Below are positions 1 through 9,785 of a stretch of DNA of 64,000 nucleotides, piece by piece. The number at the start of each line of letters is the position of its first letter. Position 1 is the first letter of the stretch. Under the pieces are notes generated by a model. That model saw only the letters and a program-made list of their open reading frames with translations. It made no database searches and was not told where the DNA came from. This stretch comes from Salisapilia sapeloensis CBS 127946 (lineage: Eukaryota; Protista; Oomycota): NCBI GenBank assembly GCA_023334545.1, contig JAADVB010000014.1:62001-126000 (forward strand), given 5' to 3'. A program made the translations under genes and the position numbers.

Positions 1-3000
1 GCTCCGACGCTATCGTATCGTTCGCTACCTTCTACGCTATTGCGTCGAGGCGCAGACTTGCGCTGTTGCTCCTTTTCTTCCTTCTTATACTCCTTTGCTT
101 TCTTCGAATGGTATTGCGTATCCATCGGTTCGAACTGAGCTCGGATAGTCGAATGCCGAAGTGACTTTGGAGGCGCGTGGACGACTGGCATGCGCACAGA
201 TGGAGGCAGTGCCACTTCGGACTTTTCTTCCTCCTCTTCCTCGTTAATCGGAGAGCCCTCGTATCGGAAGCTCTTGGGCGGAGCAGTCACTTCCTCCACC
301 TCTAGCTCACCGTCTTCGAACTTGATACTCTTCGGTGGAGCGCCAACCGATTCAAACACATTCACATCGTCCCGCTCGCTATCAATGTCATATTCGCTGT
401 CATGGAGCGACATGTTCCGTTCATTGTCCACATCAAAGCTGCGTCCACTATCTCGGATGCTTGGAGGTGCATCCAGTGGGTAGTCATCTGGCGATTGCAA
501 CGTCTCCGGTACAATGTCTTCTTCCTCGAGCTTACTTTCCTCGGTCGTGTCTTCTGCAGGAGCTTTGACTGTTTCTGCGAGTGTAAAGTTGTGCCACCTC
601 GCACTCGCTCTGTCCATAAAGCTTCTAGCCAAGATCCCCGAGTTCTCCTTTGTCGTCGTCGTCTTCTCCGACTTGATGATACGTAGCACCCGATTAACAT
701 TCGACCACGTCGTGTTCTCCATCTTGCCCTTATTCTCCGACATACCTTCGAGGAACTTGACCACATCCTTGTAGTACTTTACGTCCTGTAGCATATAGTC
801 ATTCTTTTGCTTCTCTTCTTCCTTTGCAGCACTTCGTGTTTCGAGGATACGTCGTACTAGCTTTAATAACGCAGGAATGTCCGAGTGCTGCATCGTCATG
901 CGGCAGAAGAGCAGCTCGAGACAGTCTTTCGACGTAATCTCACTAAACTGCACGAGACGTCTCGCGAGACGAAGGACACATCTGTACGGAAAGCTCGTGA
1001 CGAGCTGCTTATTGCACTGCCGTATCAGCGTCACAATCTGTGCAGGCATGCCACTGCTACCTATACTCTCTTCGATCGGCACGTCTGCACGTAGGATGTA
1101 CGTTGTTGCTGTTGTTAGCTTCTCGACTTCATCTGCTGCTTCCTTGAGATGTGGTGGCGGTTGAGTCAAGTCAAAGCCCATGAGCTCCTGCAAGCGTTCC
1201 GACCAGAGTTGGAAGAGGAGTTCCAAGTTGTAAGCTGCGTTCGTCAGTTTCTCCGGATCCGGACGAGATAAGAACCGGTCGAGGTACAGCCCGGCAACAA
1301 AGTTATCTGGGTATCGAACGTAATCCGTTTCGTCATTCAGCTCGACGCTATCACGCTTGGCACTCGATCGCTCGAGTCGATTGCGACAGATGATCTCATC
1401 CACCTTCTTCCGCACGGTCGTTCGCCAGTGGGAGTTCCAGATTAAGTCACTCTTGTCATGATTGTCGTCAAAGAACTTGGGCGCGAGCATCGGGTCCAAG
1501 TGCACTTGATACACGATCGGGTACGGTAAGAAGCGGCACAGTCCGCTGTACATTTTCTCTCGCAAGGCAAAGTCCTTGACAAGGAGAGCGTACAACACTT
1601 CAAACGCTGGTTCACGCAAAGCTTCTGCACGCAAATAGTGTTCATGCAGCACATACTGGCGGCTTTGGATGGCTGTACCGAGGATCTCTACCCATAAGCC
1701 ACTGCTCTGGACGTACTGCGCGACCACGAGACAAGTATCACAGATTTCAGCCAAGCACGCGAGCGCGTAGTATGCTTGCTCGTAGTCCAAGTGGTCCGTG
1801 ATGACCTGCAAGCTCCATGTGTATTGACAGAAGGGCGACAGCATGCGTTCGAGATTTTCTTCAAAGCCGCAGATTTTGTTCAGAATCAACAGAGCGAGTT
1901 CTTGACGACCGAGGTACTCTCGATCACCAAACGCGCGCTCCATCTCGGACGACATGCCGTCTGAATTCACTTGTTCTTGCTGGGTCTTGAACCCATACGC
2001 CGAGAGAGAGCGTTTGGAAGAGATGGACATGACCTGTCCGCCATCTTTCTCCTGATCCTTATCGAATGGAAGGAGGTATCGACCTAGTGTCGACACAGAG
2101 ATGGATGCCATTACAGGATCCAAGTCGTCTACATGCTGTTCTAAAGCATCTACAAAGGCTGGTCGGAAGGACGGCAAGTCGGCAATGAGACTCAGACATT
2201 CTAGAGCAGGAAGTGTGTCGCTGTAGATGGCAAGTCCAGGATCTCGGTTCTCATTGAGGAACATGAAGAGGGCTTCGACAAACTCAATCGCAGTCGAAGG
2301 GTACAATGTATCAGGCGATATGACCTCTTGCTTGTCCGCCTTTTCAAGCAGAACAAAGAGGTATACGCCACCGACAAAAGGTTCTGTTTCCAGACTGCCA
2401 TACATGTAACTCGCAGCACTTTCAATGAACTCGAGTCCAGCAACTTGCAAGTCGCAATGCTCTTGCGCAAGCATCTGCAGCTCTTCTCTCGTGCTTTCAT
2501 TCCAAATGCACGTCGGTTCTCGAATCTCAGACGTCAAGATCGTGATAAAGTCATGTCCCTTTTCTCTGTCAAGACAGTCGAGGAACGCAACAGGTAGTAA
2601 GTTCGCAAGTGCATCAAGTGCAGGCGATCGACTCTTGCCGTCTTTACCCAGTGACATGGCTCGTAGACACGCAAATGCGCTTTCAATAAGATGCTTATCC
2701 TCGTCATTTGTAACACCCTCGTCTTCTGCAGAAGTCAAGATGAGATTCAACGCTTTCCAGAACAGGCGTGTGCTACCAACGAGTTCATTCTGCAGCGTCG
2801 GTAGAGCACAAAGCGATGCAGCAATGTCGTATAAATGTTTCTGGATGGAAGAAGACTGCACTCTCTCGGTCGACAGTAGCAACGTATCTAGTTGTTCTAG
2901 TATGCGCATTGCGTAGGACGGTAGAGGGCCGCCCAAGAAAGTTTGAGAGGATGGCATGAGGTCGTTCTCGGAGAAGAGCATCATGGAGTCTTCCGTCCCA

Positions 3001-6000
3001 TATCGACTCGACAGGGGAGGTGCCGTACTCACTGCCTGCGACTGTTCTCCAGAGAGAGACCTTAGTCCGCTATCAGACGAACAGATCTGCTCGAGTATAG
3101 CCAACGTAGTCTGCTTGTCCTTCGACGTCGCGTGACGCATGGAGATATCGACCATATCTATCAACGTATCCCAAGCATTGGTCGTATCAAGCAACAGCTC
3201 GATATTTGTTGGTGCGACGACGATCATTTGGTGCAGAATCTGAAGCGCCAGAGGTCGGAAGGACTTGGTGTCCCCCTCAAAGCTTTCCGTTGAAACGACG
3301 AGTTGTAACAAGAGGTCGAGCGTCGTGCTTTCAAAGGACGAAAGCTCGAGACGGAACTTGGACAAGAGCTGGAACATAGCACGGAGGATCGTGTCCACGA
3401 CGTCGTTCGACGTCTTTCCCTGATCCTTCTCATCCATACGCTCCAGTTGCTGACTCAGTGCGTCAAAGGCACTTCGGACAGTAGTGACTTCGACGCCTTG
3501 TTGGCACAAAGCACGGTATCGATCTCGCAGATCCTGCAGCGTATACGCGACGCCATCGTTCCACCCGAAGACTTTGTAAGCCGACGCATTGTCCGGAATG
3601 TCTTCTCCTTGCACTTGACGTCGCACGAGGTACCTCCATTTCTCCTCGACACTTCGTAAAAGCAAGAGCGGTTCTTCCACTGCGTCCAGCTCTTCCTCAT
3701 TCTCCACCAAGTTGGATATGTAGTACCCGCTGCAATAGACGTCTGTCGATAGTTCTGCATACACGACGCTTGGCATGGGAACGTATTGATACACGGCAGT
3801 CACGTCGCGACTCAGCTCTTCCGTGAAGCTATCAAGGTGCTCTGCTAGCATCTCCTGTAAGTGAGAGCGCATGTGGCTCGACCAGAGAACACGCTTATCC
3901 GTCTTGCGACCAGTGTACACATCGGCAAAGTGTTCGGGTGTGTCTGTATCCAACAGTCCGACAAGACTCTCCGGTAGCAAGTCAAGCACGTAGCTCTGTC
4001 CTGCGCGACGTTCTCGTGTCGTTTGGTTCCGATGGATTTGCCGCAGTAGTATCGCTTCCTCCACAAAGCTCTTCGTGTCCGTCTTACTGACTGGGGACGC
4101 GAAGAGGAAGAAAAAAGTTCCGTACTGATACAACGTCTGCTGCACATCTACACGTAAAGATCGGAGAATCATGCATACCAGACCGCGTGTCTTCCGGTCG
4201 TCCACAAGAAGGAGCTGCGTCAGCATCGGCAGACATGGGGATTCCGATAGGACACTGTCTGCTAGTGACGGCGGCCACAGGTCAACATACTTGTGCGTCT
4301 CCTTTTTGCTCTCTGTCGTGAGCAAATGCTGCACCACTTGTAGAGCATGGACGGACGTGGCGTATGGGTCGACAGGTTCATCCGGGAGTTCCATCCACCG
4401 GAGCTCTGGTACGTCAAACAGAGGCTGCCAGTTGTGATTATCGGCGTCCATCGTCTCGTGATGAGAGCAACAGCAGACACTGACGTCAAGACTGTTCTGC
4501 CTTCCACTAGACGCGTCATTATCCAAGTATGCTCTCAAGTCCGGGACGGTAAACGGCCCGCCGATGACAAAATCATCTTTGCCAAACACGTGCTTCACTC
4601 GCCACTGGAGGTTGAAGCGGGCAGTCTCCATATTACGAAGATACGTGCCTCGTAGTGTATTCGACTTGGGCAGACTGTCTCGAGATGAAGAGCGTTTAAA
4701 GTCCATGAGCGGGATACTGTCGTTATCCGTCGAGACTGGGTTAATCGCTTGGGACGGAGCGAAAACGCGACGACAGTGGGCGAGAGACGCAAGGAAGAGG
4801 AACATGCGCACGTGACTGCGGGAGCTGAAGTGCGTGGCAGACTCAAAGTTTTCCGTAAGGAACGAGATCAACTGGACAAGGTCCTCCACTTCACCTGCCA
4901 AGTACGAGTGTTTCAGGAGCTGAAGTAGGAATCTCGCTCGATTGGCACTCGCTTTCCGAGCTTCAGGAAACACTCGTGCGAGTTCAATCAGTATTTTGAG
5001 CATCCAGTAGCAGTGCTCATCTGCCATCGGTCGGTTCGACAGGTAGTGTGATTCATCTCGTCGACCGTCACTCGTACCGGACGATCCATAGTACAGAATC
5101 GACGTGAGGTGCAGGTTCTCCAGCCACGTCTGATAGACGTCGTGGAAAAAGGTGGCAGGTGCCTTTGCAATCTCCATACTGGCAAAGTAGACGTCTTCCG
5201 ATACGCTATGCTTTAGCTTCTTACTTGTCTTTTTATCGATAGACTGCGTCACTTCATCCAACTTGAGAGACCCGTCCTTGATCTTCTCCATGAGCACACG
5301 CAAGTAAAAGTTACCCACACGAGGCTCTGTCGAGAGACTCATGTACACAACTTGAAACTGCTGGTGGTTCCACGACACACGACTCGTCGTCAGCGCCATG
5401 TCTGCATCTAGAGACTCGAGCGCCTGCTTCCTCGCGTCCAAGCTGTCGAGACTCTCTTTCAGTCCCAGGCGCAGTTCATTTCGAGTCTCGTCGTTCCAGA
5501 TCACATCTGGAAGCTGGAAATCACGATGTACCAAGGATGCTAGCAATGCGAGGTCACCTGGCGTCTCGCCTGGGTAGTTCATACGTGTGTTTTCATGCAT
5601 CTTGGATGCAGCTCCTGGACCTGTCTCTGGGAATAAAGCAGTCATCTGAGCCTTCATCCGCTGGACGAACCAAGCATCTGGCGATCCGTCTTTCCCACCA
5701 GCCTTACCGCCTTGCTGTAGCTCTTTTAGCGCCTTCTTTCGAGCTTGTGGATTGGCAAGCACACGGAGAAAACCGGCGGGTACGACTCTTTTCAAAAGCT
5801 CATACGAAGGCTTGTGATGCGTCATCCAGATCGCACCTAGATACTGGTACGTCTCCTTGCCTAAGCTCATGGGATGGAAGAACGATCGATAGAGGTCGGT
5901 GAGCGTGACGCCAGCTTCCATTGCTGCATCACATACCTTCATCCTAGCTTTCGCATCGGCATTCTCGACGATTACTTTGAGAATACAAGTTGCTGCGACG

Positions 6001-9000
6001 GCCATACCGATACTTGGACCCTTTGCTCTTGCAAGTTGAAGCAAGACGTTGTACTTGTTCGCTAGTGCTCGAATCATGACTTCGTACTGGTTATTGTCTG
6101 TACTCTGCCGTGACTGGACGAGGATATCTAAGAAGAGCTGAAGGACAGCAAGAGAGACGGAAGGCTTAAGTGGATCCAAGAGATCCACCAGCAACTGCGT
6201 CAGTTTCTTGTGCTCAAAGACCTGAAGTCGGACTCGTTTCTCTTGTGCACGGTTTGCAGTCGTCTTGGATGCGTCGACCGTGAGTGAATGCAGCGCTTCG
6301 ACTGCCCACACACAAGCCAACGTCTCTCCACTCACCAACACGTGGGTCAAGTGTGGGACGATGCCGTCGCCTCCGTCTCTCGAGAGCATGTAGCATCCAT
6401 CATTCACTCGACAAAAGGCGTCTAACGCCACTGCTAGATCAGATGTACGCACTGGAGGCTTACACGCATGCTCGAGAAGATTCTTGACTGTATTCATCAT
6501 CGGTGCAAACGAGAACTTTGCAATGGCAGTGCTCGTGTCTTTGGTCTTGGTAAAGTCTCCTCTCCGCACGTTCATACTCATGTTTTCAAGCGCCAACAAC
6601 GACTGGTCTTCACTCTTTTCCAACTCGTGTGTCAATTCGGAAAAGGCTGCGACGAAGAAGCCGTCATCTTGCAAGTAATAATACTTTTCCATGCTTTCTT
6701 GCAAGAGCGATCGACACGTTAGACGAGCGTTCGTCGTCGGAAACTCGTGTGTAAACGTCACATCCAGATTCTTTGCTTCAAGACAAGCATCGTAGATGGC
6801 ACCTAAAAAGTCTTGCATATCGTCAGGAGCATACACGACTCTCGTAAGATCGCTCATTTCCACCGACACAACAGGATCTCCTGCATCTTGTGGTGACTGC
6901 TTCGGAGCAATCACACGCCGCACTTTCTTCACGTCCACTCGCTTCACGTCATGCAGTCCGCTCCATTCTTCCAAGTGACCGTACCAGAATCGAACCTTTT
7001 TACGTCGGAAACGAGCGAATCCGTGTCGTCCCGTCCGCTTCTGAACTTCCATAAAACCACTGCCGGCATCGAAGAACGAATCATCGAGTTCATTTGGATT
7101 CGCAGTTTTGGGTGGTTGTGGAGGCAGTTCATCCACTGTTTCAACCATAATCTGCTGGCCGACAACACCAGAGAGCTCTTGTACCTTTTGTAGCAACATC
7201 CGAGTCTGGTCCGAATACACGTACCGGATCTTATTATCTGCTAACGTGAGCATGAGTGCATCTGGAAACTGCGTGGCTTGTGTGATTTTAACAATGTTCC
7301 GGTACTCGAATTCATGCGTGTGTCTATTGATCACTCGAACGCAGATCAACGCTCTGGGTGTCAAGAACAATTCGCTCTTCTCTCGCTGCCCATCCGATGA
7401 GCCAAGGAACCCAGAGAACTGATGACACTCGACACCAAAAAGTCGGCGGAACTCGTCAAAGTTACCCACGACATGACTCAAGAGTTCCTGAAGAAAGATG
7501 TTCTTGCAACGATAGCGTAGGCGCAAGTACACTGCGTCATCATACGCTGTCAGAGGCTGTTGCAGAGCTCCACACTTGGCATTTAAGAACGCCATGTACT
7601 GTTGCAAAAGCACTTCGGGATTCTGCACAGTCACGCCTGTGCCCCAACTGCTTGCTGATGACATGGAAGAGTAGCTATTACCTCGACTTAAAGTAAAGCT
7701 GTTCCGTTTGCCACGAGAAGAGAGGACGTTGTGTCTTCCAGACATGGGCTTCCCACTAATAGGTGCCTGTCCATTACCTCGATGACTCCCCGCTCCGTAA
7801 TTCACGTTTTCTCCGAAACTGAACGTTTGCTTTGGCACTTGCTGACTGCGAGATGCAATCACGCTTTCCATGTTCGCCCCGGATGCTCCTGGTAGATGTG
7901 TCAGAATACCCACACAAGCTTCGACAGATGCAAGCGACGGGAACGAGAAAAGGACTCGTTGGATAGCTCGGTGTCTCGATGCAAGTTGCTCTACAAGACT
8001 GTTCGTTAGCTTCTGCTGTTTGCCTTGACCTGTCTTCAGCAACAGCAGCAGTAGTCGACACACCTGCATCGTCTGCAAATCCTTTGCGGCTGGGTTCTCA
8101 TCGTCGAGTAAGGTCAATAGTGTTGGTACGATGACCTTGTTCCCCAACAACGTTTTCCGACAGTCGAGCTCGTGCATCGGAGATGCCATTAGACGTTCGA
8201 TGACAGTGGTCATCCAGTAGACGCAGACAGAAGAATGACTGGCAAAGATGTTGGCAATGGTCGTCAAGTAGTCATCTCCGCGCTCCACTAGGATACTCAT
8301 AAACTCTTTCAACGCTGTTGGTGCCGCCACGAGTCTCGCCAGCGTCTCCACGTACGTCGCGACGAACTCGTGATCGGCGCCATGTCTCCCGACAACGTCA
8401 TGGATCTCTCTCGCTACCACAAACACAGCCTTTTCAAATGGTTTCCCGTTTAAGGTATACACGCCAGTGGTTGCCGAGTTCACATTCAGCTCCAGCGCTA
8501 GTGCATGCATCGTCTCGTCCAAGCCTCTGGGTAACTGGCGCTGCACACGTGCCGTCTTGGTGTACCCGTGCGTGGCCAGTTGCTGTAGTATACTCCCTTG
8601 TACCACTCGTAGCTCCTTGTCAGTGGCACTAAGGTCTTTGCTTTGATGATTCATCTTGGCAGCTTCTGCCTGCAACGTCCGACGAGGCACTACGCGCATC
8701 CAGTTAGCTGTGCGGGACGTCGTGAGTGTTACTTGGGCATTGCCCCGTGCACGACATGAGGACAGGAGCTCTGCGACGATCTTCTCTCGATGTTCACAAA
8801 AGTAGAGACGGGAGATGCCGTCGGAGAAGACGAGTTCAAAGGCGTGAGATGATTCTTGGTACAAGATGAGTTCATAGAGACGCGTGAGCGGACGACTGGA
8901 GACAATGGTCTTCTGGTCATCTAGCAACTCGATGATGAATTGCTCTGTCAAGGTGAGAATACGTGAGGAAGAAGGAGCGTTTGCGGACGAAGAGGCCTTG

Positions 9001-9785
9001 AGAACATGGTACTGACATGAAAGGTGTTCACGTGAGGTCACGTCATCTTTCTCAGCTGCTTCCAATGTCTTCTTCCGGTACTCGTTCATCTTCATTCCGT
9101 AGAGCTTCATGACGCGGTGGATGGCCGACACGAGGTCAGATCGACGATCTAATAGGAAGAGACTGGAGTTGGTTGCATGGTTCAAGACGACAGCAGAAGA
9201 GTCGTCCGAGATGAGATCGATCGATACGAGACTCGTGTACGAGATGTGGGACATGACGTCGCCGTCGACATCCAGTTGGGCGATGCCGTCGGGACGCACT
9301 TGGATGGTACATTCAGACAGAACGTCCTTGGCATGATGTTTCGACGCTGGAAACGAGATGGTTTCTAACTCTTGTGGCAGCGGACGACGAGATGCTTTGG
9401 CATTGTGCAGAGCACGCATGCGTAGTAGAGTGACGACGATATCCATGCGATAATGGCATCGATAGACGGTCTTCTTGATACGATGTCGGGGCGTATGAAC
9501 GATAAAATCCTAGTAAATGGCAAGAGCAATGGAATAAGATTGTTAGCATGTCTTCGTAGGTAAAATGTAGTCATGGTAGAGACTATGGATAAGGAATCGT
9601 ACCGTTTCGCCGTCCATGAGACTTGCACTCTGGACGTCTTCATACGGCCAGGTATTGGTAATCTGCTGGCTGTCCCGGTCGTAGGTGCAAAAAGCATACT
9701 CTCCAAAACACAGCACGCGCTCTTTCACGACAAAGCTGCCGACTTTGGAGACCATATAGCGTTCCTTGACGCGCTTCAAGTCCAT
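1..9785 (-). CDS. DNAJC13: RME-8/DNAJC13 (GRV2)-like endosomal trafficking protein, C-terminus runs off the window; exon 1 9603-9785, intron 9510-9602, exon 2 <1-9509
   Basis: N-terminus RYMVSK..ERVLCFGEYAFCTYDRDSQQITNTWPYED resembles the RME-8 N-terminal region. Exon 2 frame was open at every spot I translated (1-240, 3361-3600, 5300-5950, 7740-8060, 8100-9509). Its absence from the ORF track fits no stop before position 1. RME-8 motifs: DVIWNDETRNEL..SWNHQQFQVVYMSLSTEPRVGNFYLRVL (~5300-5510), WQPLFDVPELRW (GYF_2-like, ~4400), VLWSSHMRSHL..AVYQYVPMPSVVY (~3780-3890), LIWNSHWR..VAGLYLDRFL (~1270-1446). Confidence 0.88.

What the first reader, a model, noticed from the sequence alone, without database searches (positions are those of the whole stretch)
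3453..3587. RME-8-like protein with a dead J-domain (no HPD motif)
At the position where RME-8/DNAJC13 carries its J-domain (between the second IWN repeat and the IILILK-like helix), the frame reads ASAYKVFGWNDGVAYTLQDLRDRYRALCQQGVEVTTVRSAFDALS. Helix I (AY.V.G), helix II (LRDRYRALCQQ) and helix III (VRSAFDAL) line up with a J-domain, but the HPDKN loop is absent. HPD is required for Hsc70 ATPase stimulation, so this copy is predicted to be a Hsc70-independent scaffold or a diverged paralogue. The translation is read from the sequence; the alignment is from memory.
Basis: partly seen in the sequence, partly recalled or inferred. Interest (0 to 1): 0.72.

Follow-up and report, generated by a model that had tools for sequence, protein, structure and literature searches.

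The report
RME-8 paralogue with HPD-less J-like domain
This oomycete gene encodes a giant relative of the endosomal sorting protein RME-8 whose chaperone-activating J-domain has kept its fold but lost the HPD loop it needs to switch on Hsp70; the organism's other two RME-8 copies have lost the motif too.

Summary
Confirmed. Window 3453-3587 (minus strand) translates exactly as reported. It lies in a two-exon RME-8 homologue of 3,329 aa: exon 1 at 9785-9603, a 93-nt intron, and exon 2 from 9509 to 294 nt beyond the window start.

The segment sits between IWN2 and IWN3 and is collinear with the J-domain of canonical RME-8.
- BLASTP across the region gives E 3e-28.
- Profile-profile comparison gives 91% probability and E 1e-6, against 3% or less for shuffled controls. 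It has a 9-residue gap where HPDKNPxGR lies.
- AlphaFold models keep helices I-III, joined by a 3-residue turn.
- The best match among 48,161 PDB chains is Tim16/Pam16, the classic HPD-less J-like domain (Z 7.2, 2.3 A over 56 aa). True J-domains also appear further down, among unrelated helical chains.
- None of the 24 family members scanned (this protein and 23 orthologues) hits Pfam DnaJ.

All 30 orthologues share the short loop, as do independent contigs. A related organism's contig has no indel there, and 10 of its 13 differences are synonymous. The loss is therefore old and maintained, not an artefact.

The genome's two other RME-8 paralogues, and their orthologues across oomycetes, also lack HPD. 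No HPD-bearing RME-8 is in the assembly.

Best reading: a pseudo-J domain in an Hsp70-uncoupled endosomal scaffold. First-stage notes had flagged two other HPD-less or J-less RME-8 homologues on other DNA of this genome.

The parts
9603..9785 (-). Exon 1 (61 codons, ATG at 9785-9783). It encodes the start of the RME-8 N-terminal PH-like region.
   Evidence: tblastn of the N-termini of six orthologues matches from residue 1 (E 1e-83 to 1e-102). The sequence was read and translated. The PF19432 six-frame match reaches window 9722.
9510..9602 (-). Intron of 93 nt, GT...AG, with two in-frame stops and a ctaac-like branch site.
   Evidence: All six orthologues tested have a 31-codon gap in the tblastn alignment exactly here. 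The GTACGA...TACTAG ends were read.
1..9509 (-). In-window part of exon 2. The exon has 3,268 codons and runs 294 nt beyond the window start to a TAA stop.
   Evidence: Stop-free frame. 30 full-length or partial orthologues at 41-50% identity.
8646..9365 (-). Best stretch of the RME-8_N (PF19432) match. Further stretches lie at about 5283-5546 and 5745-6305.
   Evidence: Pfam E 6.3e-61. Six-frame genome scan.
5466..5507 (-). IWN1 motif (DVIWNDETRNELRL).
   Evidence: Motif scan and translation.
3852..3893 (-). IWN2-type motif (RVLWSSHMRSHLQE).
   Evidence: It aligns with IWN2 of canonical RME-8.
3414..3611 (-). J-like (pseudo-J) domain of 66 aa. It contains the reported segment 3453-3587.
   Evidence: hhalign against RME-8 J-domains: 90-91% probability. 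AlphaFold model pLDDT 82. Best structural match Tim16 J-like domain, Z 7.2, with J-domains filling the Foldseek list.
3567..3587 (-). Helix I (ASAYKVF).
   Evidence: DSSP on the models. Translation.
3498..3539 (-). Helix II (LQDLRDRYRALCQQ). L, R and R of LRxR are invariant among the 24 family members aligned, and the following Y and R are at least 90% conserved.
3489..3497 (-). Three-residue turn G-V-E, in the place of the canonical loop with the HPD motif.
   Evidence: The profile-profile alignment opens a 9-column gap here, opposite HPDKNPxGR. The model shows a 3-residue non-helical link.
3423..3488 (-). Helix III (VTTVRSAFDALSQQLERMDEKD). It carries the AY/AF-x-x-L signature of J-domain helix III.
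2472..2513 (-). IWN3 motif (TCIWNESTREELQM).
1407..1448 (-). IWN4 motif (DLIWNSHWRTTVRK).

Best explanation
The segment is a pseudo-J (J-like) domain. It descends from the J-domain of RME-8/DNAJC13 and keeps helices I-III and their packing. About nine residues of the helix II-III loop, including the HPD tripeptide, have been lost, leaving a G-V-E turn.

Shown here:
- The gene is a two-exon, 3,329-aa member of a long RME-8 paralogue family recovered only from peronosporalean oomycetes.
- It keeps the RME-8 N-terminal region and all four IWN motifs.
- The same short loop is present in every orthologue, and the segment shows mostly synonymous change.
- In trees the family groups with a second oomycete paralogue type (here on contig C431), which has a full-length J-like domain whose HPD has decayed. 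That fits a stepwise decay: first HPD is lost, then the loop is deleted.

Inferred:
- HPD is the element that stimulates Hsp70 ATPase, so this domain cannot act as an Hsp70 co-chaperone.
- The protein probably works as an endosome-associated alpha-solenoid scaffold.
- The J-like domain is retained for a structural or regulatory contact. One candidate is the Hsp70-independent self-interaction of the basic helix II with the IWN3/IWN4 region described for C. elegans RME-8.
For: Position: a continuous BLASTP alignment with a canonical, HPD-bearing RME-8 (P0031) runs from before IWN2 through the J-domain and beyond (E 3e-28; six-frame E 1.9e-25). A family profile finds 478 RME-8 relatives, and the listed best stretches of many top hits span the J position.

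Sequence: hhalign of the family's 66-aa profile against 86 true RME-8 J-domains gives 90-91% probability and E about 1e-6, with a gap opposite HPDKNPxGR. Controls reach at most 3.2%.

Fold:
- AlphaFold models have pLDDT 81-82 with three helices.
- The Foldseek-independent search of 48,161 chains ranks the Tim16 J-like domain first: Z 7.2, rmsd 2.3 A over 56 of 65 residues. Polyomavirus T antigen, HscB and SV40 small t J-domains appear lower in the list.
- J-domains make up most of the Foldseek top 50.
- In the 161-aa model, residues 52-110 match Tim16 (Z 7.6) and the Rbj J-domain (Z 6.5, 1.8 A over 54 residues).

Age and selection:
- All 30 orthologues share the short loop.
- Seven columns are invariant and eight more are at least 90% conserved.
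- A related organism's contig shows 13 nucleotide differences, only 3 amino-acid changes and no indel.

Phylogeny: this family plus the C431 type form a clade with 99-100 SH-aLRT support. The C431-type J-like region matches the J profile at 97.6% probability but has variable residues where HPD should be.

Background from papers:
- HPD is critical for Hsc70 binding and ATPase stimulation, and HPD-to-AAA DNAJC13 still reaches endosomes, more strongly than wild type (PMC12404652).
- The C. elegans J-domain binds the IWN3/IWN4 region through its basic helix II (PMC9642905).
- The Pam16 J-like domain cannot stimulate Hsp70 (PMC3237618).
Against: None of the 24 family members reaches Pfam DnaJ even at E<=10. 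The family profile finds no J-domain in PDB by sequence; its best hit is calmodulin at a non-significant E of 0.12. The structural Z-scores (7.2-7.6) are in the range the tool calls middling for helical models, and no Foldseek E-value is significant. The segment is no better conserved than the rest of the protein: it falls at the 24th percentile of 45-aa windows, so there is no sign of special constraint. Loss of Hsp70 stimulation, endosomal localisation and the helix II latch role are all inferred and untested. The one complex prediction gave no verdict. BLASTP and MAFFT place the gap differently (2 versus 12 residues), so the exact size of the deletion (9 by hhalign) is uncertain, although the absence of HPD is not.
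Confidence: 0.78

Rival explanations
1. The domain still engages Hsp70 despite lacking HPD. It would use the retained basic helix II (LRxRYR) to bind Hsp70 as a tether or competitive regulator rather than an ATPase activator.
For: L, R and R of LRxR in helix II are invariant, and the following Y and R are at least 90% conserved, across the 24 family members aligned. Helix II is described as the basic face of the RME-8 J-domain (PMC9642905).
Against: HPD is described as critical for Hsc70 binding as well as for stimulation (PMC12404652). The loop that carries it is deleted, not merely substituted. No data here bear on binding.
Confidence: 0.12
2. Pam16-like mode: the J-like domain pairs with a genuine J-domain of another protein and positions or restrains that partner's Hsp70-stimulating activity on endosomes.
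For: The best structural match in two searches is Tim16/Pam16 (Z 7.6 and 7.2). Pam16 works by heterodimerising with the J-domain of Pam18 (PMC3237618). The genome has at least 50 candidate J-domain loci that could supply a partner.
Against: The match reflects a shared minimal fold, and identity is 12-13%. No candidate partner was identified. None of the RME-8 paralogues keeps HPD, so there is no obvious in-family partner.
Confidence: 0.07
3. The segment is not J-derived. It would be an unrelated helical linker, or a degenerate EF-hand-like helix-loop-helix, that happens to sit where the J-domain was.
For: Pfam DnaJ fails on all members. The family profile's best PDB sequence hits are calmodulin EF-hands at E 0.12 to 1.
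Against: Those hits are not significant, and the loop (GWNDGVAYTLQD) lacks the acidic Ca-binding positions. The flanks are collinear with RME-8 on both sides. hhalign against J-domains gives 91%, with clean controls. The structural lists are dominated by J-domains. The sister paralogue type gives an intermediate form at 97.6%.
Confidence: 0.02
4. Artefact or decay: an assembly deletion, or a pseudogene drifting after loss of function.
For: None beyond the missing motif.
Against: Contigs from two runs of a different study (X1, X3) cover 2800-4300 with no difference and no gap. All 30 orthologues share the architecture. Exon 2 is open for 3,268 codons. 10 of 13 differences in a related organism are synonymous.
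Confidence: 0.01

Closest known systems
RME-8 / DNAJC13 / GRV2 (endosomal J-domain protein of animals, plants and many protists)
   Same: It has the RME-8_N region (PF19432, E 6e-61), four IWN motifs in the same order, and a central domain at the J position. The central 400-700 residues are collinear with canonical RME-8.
   Different: It has no HPD and no Pfam DnaJ match, and the helix II-III loop is shortened to 3 residues. It is about 1,000 aa longer than the canonical proteins found here (3,329 aa against 2,267-2,661 aa for P0031-P0033). No GYF_2 domain, which the canonical hits carry, was detected. It is one of three paralogues rather than a single gene.
Tim16/Pam16 J-like domain (PDB 2GUZ chain B)
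   Same: It has the J fold without an HPD motif, and this is the best structural match (Z 7.2-7.6, rmsd 2.2-2.3 A over 56 residues). Pam16's J-like domain is known not to stimulate Hsp70 (PMC3237618).
   Different: Sequence identity is only 12-13% and no specific relationship was found. Pam16 is a small mitochondrial import-motor subunit that works as a heterodimer with Pam18. No partner is known here.
C431-type oomycete RME-8 paralogue (this genome L018:572-8653; Pythium brassicae, Peronospora farinosa, Thraustotheca, Aphanomyces)
   Same: It is the closest relative in the tree (99-100 support). It is also HPD-less, also has PF19432 only, and has the same IWN layout.
   Different: It keeps a full-length helix II-III loop with variable residues (HAD here; PEY, PEN, SDI and others elsewhere) and still matches the J profile at 97.6%. 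It is about 2,500-2,700 aa long and also occurs in Saprolegniales.
C738-type oomycete RME-8 paralogue (L011:267-7583; 43 orthologues including Albugo and Saprolegnia)
   Same: It is an RME-8_N protein with no DnaJ match and no HPD at the J position.
   Different: It is much better conserved (about 60% identity to Phytophthora, against 48% for this gene). The J position holds a different conserved motif (LLDATALLLRRFP-D/E). It sits on a separate long branch in the tree.

Membership tests
RME-8 / DNAJC13 family | N-terminal RME-8_N region (PF19432), which includes the PH-like lipid-binding part | tested here: met
   E 6.3e-61 and 207 bits against a cut-off of 25.4. The six-frame match covers profile positions 14-348 once exon 1 is included.
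RME-8 / DNAJC13 family | Four IWN repeats, two on each side of the central domain | tested here: met
   IWN1, an IWN2-type LWS motif, IWN3 and IWN4 are found in order, at window 5466-5507, 3852-3893, 2472-2513 and 1407-1448.
RME-8 / DNAJC13 family | Central J-domain with the HPD motif (PF00226) | tested here: not met
   There is no PF00226 match at E<=1 on the whole in-window protein, at E<=10 on the local piece, or in any of the 24 family members. There is no HPD in either exon.
RME-8 / DNAJC13 family | Collinear homology with canonical RME-8 through the central region | tested here: met
   BLASTP E 3e-28 over 425 columns. The profile search gives 478 relatives, the nearest outside the family at E 1e-60.
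RME-8 / DNAJC13 family | PI(3)P binding, SNX1 and FAM21/WASH binding, and endosomal localisation | not testable with these tools
   These need lipid-binding, interaction and imaging experiments.
J-domain (DnaJ, PF00226) | Score above Pfam's gathering threshold | tested here: not met
J-domain (DnaJ, PF00226) | Invariant HPD tripeptide in the loop between helices II and III | tested here: not met
   The loop is G-V-E. A 9-column gap lies opposite HPDKNPxGR.
J-domain (DnaJ, PF00226) | J fold: helix I packed on an antiparallel helix II-III hairpin | tested here: inconclusive
   The predicted models match J and J-like domains best. However, Z is 7.2-7.6 and Foldseek E is above 0.1, below the levels the tools treat as decisive, and the structure is only predicted.
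J-domain (DnaJ, PF00226) | Stimulation of Hsp70 ATPase | not testable with these tools
   This needs a biochemical assay.
J-like (pseudo-J) domains of the Pam16/Tim16 kind | J-type fold and J-domain ancestry without HPD | tested here: met
   hhalign against J-domains gives 91%. Tim16 is the top structural match. HPD is absent.
J-like (pseudo-J) domains of the Pam16/Tim16 kind | Heterodimer with a true J-domain partner | not tested
   No partner candidate was identified.
EF-hand | 12-residue Ca-binding loop with acidic or polar ligands at positions 1, 3, 5 and 12 | tested here: not met
   The only hits are calmodulin at non-significant E of 0.12 or more. The loop reads G-W-N-D-G-V-A-Y-T-L-Q-D, with G at position 1.

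The most novel reading that the evidence does not exclude
Oomycetes as a lineage may run RME-8-type endosomal sorting with no Hsp70 activation by RME-8. All three paralogue families lack HPD, and one loss before the duplications is not rejected (p-AU 0.57). If so, the conserved core job of RME-8 would be an Hsp70-independent scaffold or conformational switch. The surviving J-like domain would act as a latch on the IWN3/IWN4 region, or as a Pam16-style partner for another J-protein.
Probability: 0.3. Interest if true: 0.65.

Novelty: new variant of a known kind. Interest (0 to 1): 0.5.

Why it matters
RME-8/DNAJC13 is usually defined by its J-domain, and its roles in uncoating endosomal microdomains are attributed to Hsc70 activation. 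Here is a natural lineage in which the rest of the architecture is kept under selection in two or three paralogues, while the HPD motif is gone from all of them. The retained parts are the N-terminal lipid-binding region, the four IWN hinges and the solenoids. This gives a ready-made separation-of-function set for asking which RME-8 activities need Hsp70. It fits recent work showing that HPD mutants of human DNAJC13 still reach endosomes and that the J-domain has a second, self-binding role. No paper in the searched library discusses RME-8 in oomycetes, and public records name these proteins only by their N-terminal domain. The oomycete genera recovered in the searches include major plant and animal pathogens, so their divergent endosomal machinery is also of cell-biological interest.

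Tried and rejected
- Sequence search of the whole protein against PDB chains found nothing.
- The family profile (A1) against PDB gave only non-significant calmodulin and Vps27 hits and no J-domain. The EF-hand idea was rejected on loop chemistry.
- A local hmmsearch with the 161-aa family profile against canonical RME-8 gave only weak scores of 8-23 bits, though the alignments were collinear. This was replaced by profile-profile comparison.
- Foldseek against PDB with both models gave no E<=0.001.
[quoted passage not shown] It is not evidence either way.
- The AU test on the 112-row tree under the mixture model did not finish in four calls. It was rerun on 47 rows under LG+G4.
- An early script that looked for HPD in a roughly mapped window wrongly called several canonical proteins (for example P0083 and P0088) HPD-less. 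This was corrected when their J-domains were extracted.
- My passing idea that the J-like segment is among the best-conserved parts of the protein was wrong: it is at the 24th percentile of 45-aa windows.
- C632 was considered as a possible fourth RME-8. It matches only the IWN1 region and has no J-domain.
- The long open frames with true J-domains (C590, C678, C710) are not RME-8-like.
- The word search with the C431 protein returned only 3 hits, so it says little about how widespread that type is. The exhaustive search and cluster look-up filled this in partly.
Full report
**1. Observation**

The segment lies in a stop-free minus-strand frame covering window 3-9509. That frame continues 294 nt beyond the window start to a TAA stop.

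The gene is not a single exon. tblastn with the N-termini of six orthologues matches from their first residue at window 9785. It then skips 31 codons, which hold two stops, and resumes at 9509. The skipped 93 nt begin GT and end AG. The model is therefore:
- exon 1 at 9785-9603 (61 codons);
- intron at 9602-9510;
- exon 2 of 3,268 codons.

The total is 3,329 aa, in line with orthologues of 3,222-3,365 aa. The reported segment is residues 2036-2080 of that protein.

Exon 2 was searched by reference. Exon 1 was checked through the six-frame family scan and tblastn.

**2. What the protein is**

Pfam finds RME-8_N (PF19432, E 6e-61) and nothing else. Four IWN-type motifs are present in the canonical order.

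The word-index search returns 30 proteins of Phytophthora, Peronospora, Hyaloperonospora, Plasmopara, Peronosclerospora, Nothophytophthora, Globisporangium and Pythium. They are 41-50% identical, and all carry PF19432 only. Canonical RME-8 proteins carrying PF00226 follow at E 5e-46 to 3e-23.

The window is therefore from an oomycete. I did not try to name the species.

**3. Is the segment the J-domain position?**

In three canonical RME-8 proteins, HPD lies 127-138 residues after IWN2. The equivalent point here is about 127 residues after IWN2.

BLASTP against canonical P0031 gives one continuous alignment. It runs from before IWN2, across the J-domain and about 130 residues beyond (E 3e-28). 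The six-frame search of the genome with P0031 gives the same block at E 1.9e-25.

A 701-aa family profile run against 1.84 billion representative proteins finds:
- five clusters of the gene's own family;
- a gap in E-value from 1e-224 to 1e-60;
- 478 RME-8 relatives in total, with the best stretches of many listed hits spanning the J position.

**4. Is it J-derived?**

Pfam DnaJ fails on the local piece and on all 24 family members, even at E<=10. A family profile finds no J-domain among PDB sequences.

Profile-profile comparison succeeds:
- The 66-aa family profile against an alignment of 86 HPD-bearing RME-8 J-domains gives probability 90-91%, E about 1e-6, over 57-59 aligned columns.
- Helix I aligns with helix I, LRxRYRxLC with lRkAYrkLA, and VRxAFDxL with IqxAYExL.
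- A 9-column gap sits opposite HPDKNPxGR.
- Thirty column-shuffled controls reach at most 3.2%, and the reversed control 0.1%.

BLASTP and MAFFT place the gap differently, at 2 and 12 residues. The size of the deletion is therefore approximate, but the absence of HPD is not in doubt.

**5. Fold**

AlphaFold2 with the orthologue alignment gives pLDDT 81 for a 161-aa piece and 82 for the 66-aa domain. Helix I is ASAYKVF, helix II is LQDLRDRYRALCQQ, then comes a 3-residue link (G-V-E) and a long helix III.

| Search | Result |
|---|---|
| VIA-align, all 48,161 representative PDB chains | Tim16/Pam16 J-like domain (2GUZ chain B) first: Z 7.2, rmsd 2.3 A, 56 of 65 residues. J-domains of polyomavirus T antigen, HscB and SV40 small t appear lower, among unrelated helical chains. 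|
| Foldseek, 66-aa model | Most of the top 50 are J-domains. The best TM-score is again Tim16 (0.66/0.67). No E-value is significant. |
| VIA-align, 161-aa model | The J-like part matches Tim16 (Z 7.6) and the Rbj J-domain (Z 6.5, 1.8 A over 54 residues). The flanks match alpha-solenoids. |

These Z-scores are in the range the tool calls middling for helical models. I therefore count the fold as supporting evidence, not proof.

**6. Not an artefact, and under selection**

All 30 orthologues have the same short loop.

Contigs of two runs from a different study (X1, X3) cover window 2800-4300 with no difference and no gap. A contig from a related organism (X6) covers 3252-3596 with 13 substitutions, no indel and only 3 amino-acid changes.

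Seven columns of the 66-aa domain are invariant among the 24 family members aligned, and eight more are at least 90% conserved. Even so, the segment is only about as conserved as the rest of the protein, at the 24th percentile of 45-aa windows.

**7. Is there an HPD-bearing RME-8 elsewhere?**

The six-frame PF19432 scan of the 22.4-Mb assembly finds two more full-length homologues, plus two partial look-alikes on C632 and C623:
- C431, 2,694 aa, with the strongest RME-8_N match;
- C738, 2,439 aa.

None has a Pfam DnaJ match. None of the 55 PF00226 matches in the genome falls in these genes. A canonical RME-8 query finds no further locus.

At the J position the three families differ:

| Paralogue type | State at the J position | Evidence |
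|---|---|---|
| C431 | Reads HAD here. Orthologues in Pythium brassicae, Peronospora farinosa, Thraustotheca and Aphanomyces have other residues there. The region still matches the J profile at 97.6%, with a full-length loop. | |
| C738 | Holds a conserved non-J motif, as do its 43 orthologues, which include Albugo and Saprolegnia. | |
| This family | Loop deleted, leaving G-V-E. | |

A canonical HPD copy exists in the stramenopile Cantina. The single labyrinthulid homologue recovered (Hondaea, P0036) also lacks HPD in its extracted J region.

Two limits apply. The assembly may be incomplete. For other oomycetes, I can only say that no retrieved protein carries HPD at this position.

**8. Phylogeny**

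A 112-row maximum-likelihood tree of the IWN2-to-post-J region puts this family (support 100) with the C431 type and one unnamed HPD-less protein, in a clade with support 99. The C738 type is a separate long branch.

A 47-row rerun gives 100 for the same clade. A tree holding all three oomycete families together is not rejected (p-AU 0.57).

This fits a stepwise decay: HPD was lost in a C431-like ancestor, and the loop was then deleted in the long paralogue. A single early loss is possible but not shown, and long branches are involved.

This family was recovered only from Peronosporales, Pythium-like genera and Lagenidium.

**9. Mechanism**

Shown: the architecture, the J ancestry, the missing HPD, and the age and maintenance of that state.

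Inferred from established knowledge:
- HPD is the element critical for Hsc70 binding and ATPase stimulation (PMC12404652; PMC3237618). The domain therefore cannot act as a co-chaperone.
- HPD-to-AAA DNAJC13 still localises to endosomes, more strongly than wild type.
- The C. elegans J-domain also binds the IWN3/IWN4 region through its basic helix II, in an autoinhibitory contact that competes with SNX-1 (PMC9642905).

The retained basic helix II makes a latch role of that kind my preferred function for the surviving domain. The rivals are residual Hsp70 tethering and a Pam16-like pairing with another J-protein. [quoted passage not shown]

**10. Comparison and novelty**

The gene is a member of the RME-8 family by N-terminal domain, IWN layout and collinearity. 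It fails the family's name-giving feature, the HPD J-domain.

It works most like a J-like (pseudo-J) protein. I file it as a new variant of a known kind.

Public records list these proteins as hypothetical or name them by the N-terminal domain. The searched literature holds nothing on RME-8 in oomycetes.

First-stage notes of this scan flagged two other RME-8 homologues on other DNA of the same genome as HPD-less or J-less. These are probably the C431 and C738 paralogues, which I had found and checked independently.

Noticed in passing
window 9510-9602 and 9603-9785: The RME-8-like gene is not a single exon. A 93-nt GT...AG intron with two in-frame stops separates a 61-codon first exon (ATG at 9785) from the long exon. 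This corrects the 'single exon of at least 9.5 kb' note.
   Followed up: yes
L018:572-8653 (G000:C431): This second RME-8 paralogue (2,694 aa) has the strongest RME-8_N match in the genome. It has a full-length J-like domain reading HAD where HPD should be. Its orthologues in other oomycetes have different residues there.
   Followed up: yes
L011:267-7583 (G000:C738): This third RME-8 paralogue (2,439 aa) is the best conserved of the three: about 60% identity to Phytophthora, with orthologues in Albugo and Saprolegniales. The J position holds a conserved motif (LLDATALLLRRFP-D/E) that no longer looks like a J-domain.
   Followed up: partly
L016:103-3279 (G000:C632) and L013:4035-7064 (G000:C623): Two further genes share only pieces of RME-8. 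A 1,059-aa frame matches RME-8_N positions 461-815 and the IWN1 region. A 1,010-aa frame has an RME-8_N-like N-terminus and a C-terminal cytochrome b5 domain, next to a FYVE-domain frame.
   Followed up: partly
window 2800-4300 (contigs of runs X1 and X3): The contigs are 12.8 and 10.1 kb and come from a different study. By extrapolation from the laid stretch, both start within 4 nt of each other just upstream of the ATG, and the shorter ends about 26 nt past the stop codon. They look like full-length transcripts, but the runs are only guessed to be RNA, and splicing of the intron could not be checked.
   Followed up: partly
proteins P0123, P0191, P0208, P0213, P0036: Several RME-8 homologues outside the three oomycete families also lacked HPD in the approximate J-window scan. 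Most are unnamed; one is from the labyrinthulid Hondaea. Loss of the motif may therefore have happened repeatedly in protist RME-8 paralogues.
   Followed up: partly
window 3498-3587: The helix I-loop-helix II stretch gives weak, non-significant matches to calmodulin EF-hands (E 0.12 to 1), but the loop lacks Ca-binding residues.
   Followed up: yes
window about 150-475: The acidic C-terminal tail carries a repeated A/L-P-P-K/S-S motif followed by a hydrophobic and a basic residue (APPKSIKF, APPKSFRY, LPPSVRM, APPKSLRH).
   Followed up: no
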